Shown here piece by piece: positions 40,626-40,845 of a DNA stretch of 64,000 bases. Source of the stretch: Chrysemys picta bellii (lineage: Eukaryota); the NCBI RefSeq assembly GCF_011386835.1, contig NC_088793.1, positions 84,754,001-84,818,000 of the forward strand, given 5' to 3'. A program made the position numbers and the translations under genes. Under the pieces are notes generated by a model. That model had not been told where the DNA came from. It saw only the letters and a program-made list of their open reading frames with translations, and did no database searches. Within the stretch, counting starts at the first letter, position 1; every line of letters begins with the position of its first letter.

Positions 40626-40845
40626 TAAGTATCAGAGGGGTAGCTGTGTTAGTCTGGATGTATAAAAAGCGACAAAGAGTCCTGGGGTAACTCATAGACT
40701 AAGACATATTGAAGCATAAGCTTTCATGGGTGGATACTCACTTCCTCAGATGCATGTAGTGTAAATTTCCAGAGGCAGGTATAAATATGCAGGCAAGAAT
40801 CAGTCTAGATGTGTGTTAGTATATAAGGTGCCACAGGACTCTTTT
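40626..40845 (-). mobile_element. Penelope-like element pLTR remnant with short inverted piece
   Basis: Related to the 53316-53505 family (gtgttagtct, gcataagctttc, aaggtgccac); contains the hammerhead. Confidence 0.7.
40714..40753 (-). ncRNA. Minimal type I hammerhead ribozyme motif, Penelope-like family A
   Basis: Minus strand: GCAU-CUGAGGA-A-GUGAGU(AUCC)ACCCAU-GAAA-GCU-U-AUGC. Stem I GCAU/AUGC, canonical CUGANGA and GAAA, palindromic stem III AGCU. Confidence 0.7.

What the first reader, a model, noticed from the sequence alone, without database searches (positions are those of the whole stretch)
40714..40753. Hammerhead ribozyme with a canonical core between the AK9 poly(A) signals and the ZBTB24 promoter
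Seen: the minus strand reads GCAU-CUGAGGA-A-GUGAGU(AUCC)ACCCAU-GAAA-GCU-U-AUGC, about 600 nt past the distal AK9 AATAAA and about 220 nt before the CpG island, in the sense of both genes. Known: Penelope-like elements carry minimal hammerheads with a tiny palindromic stem III that work as dimers; an extra A after A9 occurs in a natural viroid hammerhead. Inference: AK9 read-through RNA could be cut at 40718/40717, acting as a co-transcriptional cleavage signal that shields a housekeeping promoter only about 1.3 kb from the AK9 stop. Caveats: U17, one stem II mismatch and no second copy nearby could make it slow or inactive.
Basis: partly seen in the sequence, partly recalled or inferred. Interest (0 to 1): 0.7.

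Follow-up and report, generated by a model that had tools for sequence, protein, structure and literature searches.

The report
Decayed Penelope retroelement hammerhead relic
The hammerhead-like motif is real, but it is an inherited and slightly decayed piece of a retrotransposon family present in thousands of copies in this genome, and nothing indicates that it cuts RNA or protects the neighbouring promoter, so it is ordinary.

Summary
A relaxed minimal-hammerhead descriptor finds only this locus in the window, against 0.01 expected by chance.

It is not a free-standing element. It sits inside a fold-back insertion of about 260 bp (about 40629-40892). That insertion belongs to a dispersed repeat onto which thousands of contigs of a DNA run pile up. 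Related copies lie at 51910-51981 and 53316-53503.

The anatomy matches the minimal hammerheads that Penelope-like retroelements (PLEs) carry near their 3' ends, described in 2014 with turtles mentioned:
- a 4-bp helix I;
- an unpaired base before a 6-bp helix II;
- a tiny palindromic helix III;
- an inverted 5'-truncated partner copy.

This copy has drifted from its family majority (G to A in helix II, a loop change, probably C11.1 to U). Its hammerhead fold is worth only about -4 kcal/mol (z +0.6), and in context the fold is predicted in under 0.2% of molecules. No tandem partner exists, and published single copies of this class do not self-cleave.

RNA contigs lie on both sides of the site and break only where DNA contigs also break. 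The terminator idea is therefore unsupported, though not formally excluded. This scan has already reported the same kind of motif on other pieces of this genome.

The parts
40714..40753 (-). Minimal type-I hammerhead motif: helix I 4 bp, core CUGAGGA, unpaired A, helix II 6 positions (G.U, U-A, G-C, A.C mismatch, G-C, U-A) with a 4-nt loop, GAAA, palindromic AGCU, U17. Predicted cut between 40718 and 40717.
   Evidence: Sequence read. It is the only descriptor hit in the window, with 0.01 expected. No Rfam hammerhead family matches, even at E<=10.
40629..40809 (-). Sense, 5'-truncated 3' region of the retroelement copy. It runs from upstream sequence through the hammerhead motif and an ~85-nt 3' tail. 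The 3' boundary is sharp to within about 4 nt.
   Evidence: blastn and alignment to the copies at 51.9k and 53.3k. In DNA run X6 the summed depth is 345,000-619,000 in bins 40532-40912 against 35-52 in the flanks. Many contigs diverge at 40624-40627, and other copies continue past 40806-40809 with a shared different sequence.
40809..40892 (-). Inverted, 5'-truncated partner copy (reverse complement of the 3' tail) abutting the sense copy head to head. It forms the left arm of a long imperfect hairpin. The outer limit is approximate: 40880 by self-alignment, about 40892 by alignment to the 53.3k copy.
   Evidence: Local alignment of 40880-40809 with the reverse complement of 40640-40709 scores 59, against shuffles of 20 +/- 3.5 with a maximum of 36. 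Other genomic copies show 'opposite strands' joints at 40659/40844 and 40669/40846. The MFE fold pairs these arms.
39200..40490 (-). CpG island upstream of the BTB/zinc-finger (ZBTB24-like) gene. This is context and not part of the element.
   Evidence: GC 0.61-0.77 in 200-nt windows. BTB E 3e-29 plus C2H2 in ORF 35868-36869.
41217..41976 (-). Last exon and 3' UTR of the upstream adenylate-kinase-domain (AK9-like) gene. The stop is at 41772-41774, with AATAAA at 41464-41469 and 41353-41358. This is context.
   Evidence: Sequence. Contigs of three probable RNA runs end at 41976/41977, next to the AG acceptor, as parts of contigs of 6333, 4615 and 302 nt. ADK-like exon fragments lie at 57648-57845 and 59442-59669.

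Best explanation
The motif is the minimal hammerhead that Penelope-like retroelements (PLEs) carry near their 3' end. It was delivered here passively, as part of a short fold-back insertion of a 5'-truncated sense copy (40809-40629) joined head to head to an inverted, more truncated copy (about 40892-40809). The element family is present in thousands of copies. The hammerhead belongs to the retroelement's own biology; in the literature it is thought to process tandem element transcripts as a dimer, with its function still unclear. In this solo, old copy it is a neutral relic. Helix II has picked up substitutions, the surrounding hairpin and a local alternative pairing sequester the 5' half of the motif, and there is no tandem partner. 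It most likely does not cleave AK9 read-through RNA to any meaningful extent and plays no part in insulating the ZBTB24 promoter.

Shown here: the motif, its membership of a high-copy fold-back repeat, its drift from the family majority, and its weak, outcompeted fold.
Inferred: the PLE identity (from architecture, the literature and earlier scan notes, since no RT-bearing copy lies in this window) and the lack of activity.
For: 1. Repeat membership. blastn of 40600-40900 against the window finds the copies at 53.3-53.5k and 51.9k (72-73% identity over 71-100 nt, E 2e-7 to 1e-4). Alignment A1 shows 52 invariant columns that cover the GAAAGCTTATGC part and the tail.
2. Copy number. 6,544 contigs of DNA run X6 were laid on 38500-42300. 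Summed depth is about 10^4-fold above the flanks only in 40532-40912, with a sharp boundary at 40624-40627.
3. Architecture. There is an inverted 5'-truncated copy next to the sense copy, as described for PLEs (PMC8557442). The helix geometry is that of PLE min-HHRs: helix I of 4-5 bp, an enlarged helix II with an unpaired 5' nucleotide, and a tiny palindromic helix III. Turtles are named in that paper (PMC4209133).
4. Drift. The family majority differs from this copy at 40738 (restores G-C in helix II), 40733 (loop) and partly 40745 (N7). Both sister copies read CAC before GAAA where this copy reads CAT.
5. Fold. The isolated motif folds at -4.4 kcal/mol, z +0.59, and 141 of 200 shuffles fold at least as well. 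In 217-701 nt contexts the helix I and II pair probabilities are at most 0.002, and enforcing them costs +6.9 kcal/mol.
6. No partner. The nearest same-strand copies are 11.2 and 12.6 kb away. One lacks the 5' core and one has U4 to C.
7. Literature. Single min-HHRs show no detectable cleavage and dimers cleave weakly (PMC4209133; PMC6765202).
Against: - The catalytic core itself (C3 U4 G5 A6 N7 G8 A9, G12 A13 A14, H17) is intact in this copy. A sister lineage in the same window carries U4 to C.
- The insertion is shared with at least two other coded organisms (X6 record 26 is identical over 40632-40761; X19 record 17 reaches 40687), so it has persisted for some time. Flank divergence is only about 0.7-3%, so this says nothing about constraint.
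- RNA from this intergenic stretch exists, so a substrate for cleavage may exist.
- Equilibrium folding does not model co-transcriptional folding or protein chaperones.
- No cleavage assay or RNA-end data were available.
Confidence: 0.88

Rival explanations
1. One reading: the solo minimal hammerhead has been exapted. AK9 transcripts that run past the poly(A) sites are self-cleaved at 40718/40717, alone or paired with another Penelope-derived RNA. The cut provides a co-transcriptional cleavage site that stops polymerases before the ZBTB24 CpG-island promoter.
For: - The core is intact and in the sense orientation of both genes, 600 nt past the AATAAA at 41353-41358 and about 220 nt before the CpG island.
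- RNA contigs extend past that poly(A) signal (X13 40780-41215, X17 40926-41391, X19 41044-41348), so read-through or some other transcript crosses the region.
- The insertion is shared between coded organisms A, C and D.
Against: - Position and sequence are fully explained by a random insertion of a family with thousands of copies.
- Helix II has drifted away from the family majority.
- The fold is weak and outcompeted.
- No tandem partner exists, and this class does not cleave as a monomer (PMC4209133).
- RNA is found at comparable depth downstream of the site (X13 9.6 against 5.5 upstream; X17 3.1 against 4.4; X19 4.6 against 3.2). The contig gap over the motif coincides with repeat-caused breaks that are also seen in DNA contigs.
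- Hammerhead products carry a 5'-OH, a poor entry point for the 5'-3' torpedo exonuclease (general knowledge). Engineered ribozyme cleavage was reported as not sufficient for Pol II termination (PMC2241900).
Confidence: 0.03
2. A chance match: an unrelated sequence that happens to satisfy a loose hammerhead descriptor.
For: The descriptor is loose (4-bp helix I, a mismatch allowed). A genome of about 2 Gb would contain some hundreds of random hits at 0.01 per 64 kb (extrapolated). Rfam models do not recognise the motif.
Against: The motif and more than 150 nt on either side are homologous to other copies that carry the same motif in the same register. Thousands of contigs match the stretch. 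It is therefore inherited and did not arise here by chance.
Confidence: 0.02
3. The insertion matters for the ZBTB24 promoter in a way unrelated to ribozyme activity. Examples would be an upstream alternative start site, a promoter-proximal element derived from the retroelement's internal promoter, or a hairpin structure in upstream antisense RNA.
For: RNA contigs run from the CpG island up into the element tail (X13 39694-40654, X19 39801-40687, X17 40388-40635). PLE terminal repeats are reported to hold promoters (PMC6765202).
Against: Those contigs stop inside the element where repeat k-mers break assemblies, in DNA as well (X6 records 25 and 26). Strand and true ends are unknown. Only the 3' ~180 nt of the element plus an inverted tail are present, not a full terminal repeat. 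Divergent transcription from CpG-island promoters would give the same picture.
Confidence: 0.07

Closest known systems
Minimal hammerhead motifs (min-HHR) of Penelope-like retroelements (Cervera & de la Pena 2014, PMC4209133; Lunse, Weinberg & Breaker 2017, as cited in PMC6765202)
   Same: Type-I topology with a conserved CUGANGA / GAAA / H17 core. Helix I is short (4 bp). Helix II is enlarged (6 bp) and preceded by an unpaired nucleotide. Helix III is reduced to a tiny palindrome (AGCU) that can only form between two copies. The motif sits near the 3' end of a 5'-truncated, partly inverted insertion of a very high-copy family. Reptiles, including a turtle, are listed as carriers.
   Different: This copy is solo, with no tandem partner. 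It carries private substitutions that weaken helix II (an A.C mismatch and G.U at 10.1-11.1). No RT/endonuclease-bearing master copy is in this window to prove the Penelope affiliation directly.
Sister copies in the same window (51910-51981; 53316-53503, the latter with a perfect 12-bp target-site duplication)
   Same: Same repeat superfamily, same register of helix II, GAAAGCTTATGC and tail, and the same fold-back architecture.
   Different: They are about 72% identical to this copy, so they belong to a younger and different subfamily. Their core reads CCGAAGA (U4 to C) or is truncated, whereas this copy keeps the canonical U4.
Exapted vertebrate hammerheads: intronic HH9/HH10 of amniotes and the discontinuous hammerhead in rodent Clec2 3' UTRs (from my own knowledge; HH9/HH10 are Rfam families)
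   Same: A hammerhead core embedded in the sense strand of a host transcription unit, with a proposed role in processing host RNA.
   Different: Those have full-length helices with tertiary loop contacts, deep conservation and demonstrated cleavage. This motif matches neither Rfam model, even at E<=10, and has no helix III, no conservation evidence and no activity data.
Co-transcriptional cleavage (CoTC) termination elements and engineered ribozyme terminators
   Different: No cleavage is shown here. An engineered, efficient hammerhead was reported as not sufficient to promote Pol II termination (PMC2241900).

Membership tests
Penelope-like element minimal hammerhead (min-HHR) | Conserved core C3-U4-G5-A6-N7-G8-A9 ... 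G12-A13-A14, with a cleavage-site nucleotide H17 that is not G | tested here: met
   CUGAGGA ... GAAA ... U17 was read directly and recovered by my descriptor scan.
Penelope-like element minimal hammerhead (min-HHR) | Enlarged helix II (6-8 bp) preceded by an unpaired nucleotide, and a short helix I (4-5 bp) | tested here: met
   There is an unpaired A, a 6-position helix II and a 4-bp helix I. Helix II has one A.C mismatch and a terminal G.U. The family majority restores the G-C at 40738.
Penelope-like element minimal hammerhead (min-HHR) | Helix III absent or reduced to a 1-2 bp stem with a small palindromic loop, able to pair only in a dimer | tested here: met
   A15.1-G-C-U16.1 forms the palindrome AGCU.
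Penelope-like element minimal hammerhead (min-HHR) | Located in the terminal repeat / 3' region of a Penelope-like element insertion (5'-truncated, often with an adjacent inverted truncated copy) | tested here: inconclusive
   The high-copy repeat, the sharp 3' boundary, the 5' truncation and the inverted partner are all shown and fit PMC8557442. No RT/GIY-YIG-bearing copy lies in this window, so the family's Penelope identity rests on the literature and on earlier scan notes.
Penelope-like element minimal hammerhead (min-HHR) | A second copy in tandem or close by on the same transcript, allowing the active dimer | tested here: not met
   The only other same-strand copies are 11.2 and 12.6 kb upstream. 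One lacks the 5' core and one has U4 to C.
Penelope-like element minimal hammerhead (min-HHR) | Self-cleavage activity | not testable with these tools
   Only contigs were available, so no RNA ends could be read. Predicted stability is poor.
Curated Rfam hammerhead families (Hammerhead_1, Hammerhead_3, Hammerhead_II, HH9, HH10) | Covariance-model score at or near the family threshold | tested here: not met
   No hit at E<=10 on 6 kb or on the 91 nt around the motif. No hit at gathering score in the whole window.
Ribozyme-based co-transcriptional terminator | RNA cut at the site and loss of downstream read-through RNA | tested here: inconclusive
   RNA contigs lie on both sides at similar depth. 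The gap over the motif is a repeat-induced assembly break that DNA contigs also show, and the strand is unknown.

The most novel reading that the evidence does not exclude
A solo Penelope-derived minimal hammerhead has been co-opted. It would pair with another Penelope-derived RNA, or be helped by a chaperone, and cut AK9 read-through transcripts about 220 nt upstream of the ZBTB24 CpG island. It would then act as a natural ribozyme-based insulator between two closely spaced tandem genes.
Probability: 0.03. Interest if true: 0.65.

Novelty: already known. Interest (0 to 1): 0.1.

Why it matters
The evidence points the other way. This is one of thousands of inherited minimal-hammerhead relics of a Penelope-type retroelement, a class described in 2014. 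The practical lesson for the scan is that an intact CUGANGA...GAAA core in this genome should first be checked for membership of this repeat family. Proximity to a gene feature is expected by chance when copies number in the thousands.

Tried and rejected
- Rfam scans at three scales found no hammerhead family. This is uninformative about min-HHRs, which the curated models do not cover, but it rules out HH9/HH10-type motifs.
- I first read an 11-nt near-repeat (40846-40856 and 40618-40628, 10 of 11 identical) as a target-site duplication. I dropped it after one search showed that its upstream copy lies inside the inverted arm. I found no convincing duplication at the revised ends.
- Cross-species conservation from laid contigs had no power. 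Organism C is identical over the motif but only about 0.7% diverged in the flanks. For organism D, only other family copies, not the orthologous motif, were laid over the core.
- RNA evidence came from assembled contigs only, so no strand, ends or levels could be read. The hole at 40688-40779 is a repeat break and not evidence of cleavage.
- A two-strand cofold of the motif gave a dimer held by other palindromic pairings rather than the double-hammerhead, so it told nothing either way.
- The search of earlier findings by sequence returned nothing.
- AK9 identity was not proven. Only weak adenylate-kinase Pfam hits on two exon-sized ORFs and a spliced last exon in RNA contigs support it.

Full report
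**Observation.** It has a 4-nt strand of helix I, CUGAGGA, one extra A, a 6-4-6 hairpin, GAAA, GCU, U, and the 4-nt complement of helix I. In standard hammerhead numbering this is a type-I motif. C3-A9 is intact (N7 = G), as is G12-A14. A15.1 and U16.1 are embedded in the palindrome AGCU. U17 is at 40718 and A1.1 at 40717.

I wrote a relaxed minimal descriptor: CUGANGA, an optional bulge, helix II of 4-8 bp with at most one mismatch, GAAA, U16.1, H17, and a perfect 4-bp helix I. On both strands it finds this locus and no other in the 64-kb window. In 300 second-order Markov simulations of the window the mean was 0.01 hits. The match is therefore not random-sequence noise.

Rfam's curated hammerhead families (types I, II, III, HH9, HH10) do not recognise it. 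There is no hit at E<=10 on 6 kb, none at E<=10 on 91 nt, and none at gathering score in the whole window.

**Context.**
- ORF 35868-36869 (minus) has a BTB domain (E 3e-29), an AT-hook-like KRKRGRPRK stretch and the start of a C2H2 finger. This fits ZBTB24.
- GC is 0.61-0.77 from about 39200 to 40490, so the CpG island ends about 220 nt from the motif.
- Upstream on the same strand, a last coding exon ends in a stop at 41772-41774, with AATAAA at 41464-41469 and 41353-41358.
- Exon-sized ORFs further upstream give weak adenylate-kinase hits.
- Contigs of three probable RNA runs stop at 41976/41977, next to the AG acceptor, while belonging to much longer contigs. That shows a spliced terminal exon.
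- I did not prove that the gene is AK9.

**What the motif sits in.** The motif is not free-standing.
- A pattern search for its 3' half finds two further same-strand sites, 51961-51996 and 53367-53402.
- The repeat finder reports 97-100% identical 66-72-nt units at 51910-51981, 53316-53387 and, inverted, 53406-53471.
- blastn of 40600-40900 against the window aligns it to those copies at 72-73% identity (E 2e-7 to 1e-4).
- The three-way alignment has 52 invariant columns through the 3' strand of helix II, GAAAGCTTATGC and the downstream tail.

Laying contigs of a DNA run (X6, coded organism C) on 38500-42300 placed 6,544 records. Summed depth is 35-52 in the flanks but 345,000-619,000 in the three bins from 40532 to 40912. 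Dozens of contigs diverge at 40624-40627, which marks a sharp 3' end. Other copies continue beyond 40806-40809 into a shared, different sequence, so this copy is 5'-truncated there. Several contigs show 'opposite strands' joints between about 40659-40669 and 40844-40846.

Consistently, 40880-40809 aligns to the reverse complement of the tail 40640-40709. The score is 59, against shuffles of 20 +/- 3.5 with a maximum of 36. Alignment to the 53.3k copy carries the similarity to about 40892.

The insertion is thus a head-to-head fold-back of about 260 bp. A sense copy truncated at 40809 carries the hammerhead and an ~85-nt tail. An inverted copy abuts it and retains only the tail.

[quoted passage not shown] The helix geometry is the one Cervera and de la Pena defined for PLE min-HHRs. 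Helix I is 4-5 bp, helix II is larger than usual with an unpaired nucleotide at its 5' end, and helix III is a tiny palindrome. They state that similar motifs are conserved in reptiles (turtle and snakes) (PMC4209133).

Earlier follow-ups of this scan reached the same identification on other pieces of this genome (s1-325572, s1-318384, s1-318380). I treat those as leads only. No RT/endonuclease-bearing master copy lies in this window, so the Penelope label itself rests on architecture and literature.

**State of this copy.** The majority of laid family contigs differ from this copy at three places in the motif (given for the minus strand):
- 40738: the majority has G where this copy has A. That restores a G-C pair where this copy has the A.C mismatch in helix II.
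- 40733: a loop change, U in the majority and C here.
- 40745, in part: N7 is C or G.

The two sister copies read CAC before GAAA where this copy reads CAT. The G.U at the conserved 10.1-11.1 position is therefore probably a CpG-to-TpG decay; that is an inference. No majority difference was reported at U4. The subfamily consensus thus appears to be a canonical core, while the younger sister lineage in the window reads CCGAAGA (U4 to C). The substitutions fall in the helix that the ribozyme needs, which is what neutral decay predicts and constraint does not.

**Folding.**
- Alone, the 40-mer adopts helices I and II at only -4.4 kcal/mol, with z +0.59. Of 200 dinucleotide shuffles, 141 fold at least as well.
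- The sister copy at 53363-53406 reaches -12.3 kcal/mol.
- In 217-, 361- and 701-nt contexts, the MFE pairs the two fold-back arms and sequesters the 5' half of the motif in a local alternative stem. The pair probabilities of helices I and II are at most 0.002.
- Enforcing them costs +6.9 kcal/mol of ensemble free energy.
- These are equilibrium predictions and do not model co-transcriptional folding.

**Can it work as proposed?**
- This class lacks a helix III and is thought to act as a dimer of neighbouring copies.
- Single motifs showed no detectable cleavage in vitro, and dimers and trimers cleaved weakly, mostly at non-physiological Mg2+ (PMC4209133; PMC6765202).
- In a 2026 preprint, only one of nine tested vertebrate retrozyme constructs cleaved.
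- There is no tandem partner here. The nearest same-strand relatives are more than 11 kb upstream in introns, one truncated and one with U4 to C.
- Mechanistically, hammerhead products carry a 5'-OH, not the 5'-phosphate preferred by the torpedo exonuclease (general knowledge). [quoted passage not shown]

**RNA data.** Only Logan contigs were available. Three runs guessed to be RNA behave as RNA: their contigs end at the splice acceptor, and X13 and X17 have no coverage in the adjacent intron, with only about 2x in X19. They show the following.

| Run (organism, study) | Upstream of the motif, past the 41353 poly(A) signal | Depth | Downstream, from the CpG island into the element tail | Depth |
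|---|---|---|---|---|
| X13 (A, P5) | 40780-41215 | 5.5 | 39694-40654 | 9.6 |
| X17 (A, P6) | 40926-41391 | 4.4 | 40388-40635 | 3.1 |
| X19 (D, P7) | 41044-41348 | 3.2 | 39801-40687 | 4.6 |

The uncovered 40688-40779 coincides with breaks in the DNA contigs (X6 records 25, 26, 32). It is therefore an assembly effect of the repeat and not a cut. Strand and ends are unknown. Read-through, upstream antisense transcription from the CpG island, or both would fit. Nothing here supports depletion of RNA downstream of the site.

**Conservation.** The insertion is present in coded organisms C and D. X6 record 26 is identical over 40632-40761, and X19 record 17 reaches 40687. The flanks differ by only about 0.7% (C) and about 1.4-3% (D), so identity of 40 nt carries no information.

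**Verdict.** The motif is a genuine Penelope-type minimal hammerhead by descent, an already described kind that this scan has already noted elsewhere in this genome. Its position between AK9 and ZBTB24 is best explained as one of thousands of insertions. The terminator hypothesis is unsupported, and several lines of evidence make it unlikely. I estimate it at about 3%, because the core is intact and no direct cleavage or RNA-end assay could be run.

Noticed in passing
window 53304-53515: The fold-back copy at 53316-53503 is flanked by a perfect 12-bp direct repeat, ATTGATTCTATT (53304-53315 and 53504-53515), which looks like a target-site duplication. In this copy the complete hammerhead (minus strand, core CCGAAGA, U4 to C) lies in the inverted arm. 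The tail-bearing copy is on the plus strand and is truncated inside the hammerhead, at the 3' strand of helix II (CAC just before GAAA), so it lacks the CUGANGA half of the core.
   Followed up: partly
window 51910-51996: A further fragment of the same family, 97-100% identical to the arms of the 53.3k copy. It is truncated inside the hammerhead, with helix II 3' strand, GAAA and tail present and the CUGANGA half missing. It lies next to an exon-sized ORF (51959-52204) of the adenylate-kinase gene.
   Followed up: no
window 38084-38457; related 3633-4093 and 53948-54151: A different dispersed hairpin repeat, with 120-nt arms that are 79% complementary (38108-38227 / 38314-38433), in the first intron of the BTB/zinc-finger gene. 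The weak mir-759-like Rfam hit (38231-38308, E 0.74, far below the gathering score) covers the loop and part of the arms and is probably spurious.
   Followed up: no
window 40780-41391 and 39694-40687: Contigs of three probable RNA runs cover the intergenic DNA beyond the AATAAA at 41353-41358, and also the stretch from the CpG island up into the repeat tail. Something is transcribed here (read-through or upstream antisense RNA), but the strand is unknown. An ATTAAA at about 40942-40947 could be a further downstream poly(A) signal.
   Followed up: partly
window 55655-55978 (minus): A reverse-transcriptase fragment (Pfam RVT_1, E 0.001, below the curated cut-off) in an intron of the adenylate-kinase gene, probably a LINE remnant. 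ORFs at 44448-45037, 60373-60771 and 62478-63769 look like other retroelement remnants by eye but gave no Pfam hit.
   Followed up: partly
window 24086-24144, 25125-25191, 30314-30396: (CA)n microsatellites, and G-rich 79-nt direct repeats at 32793-33038. These are ordinary low-complexity features.
   Followed up: no
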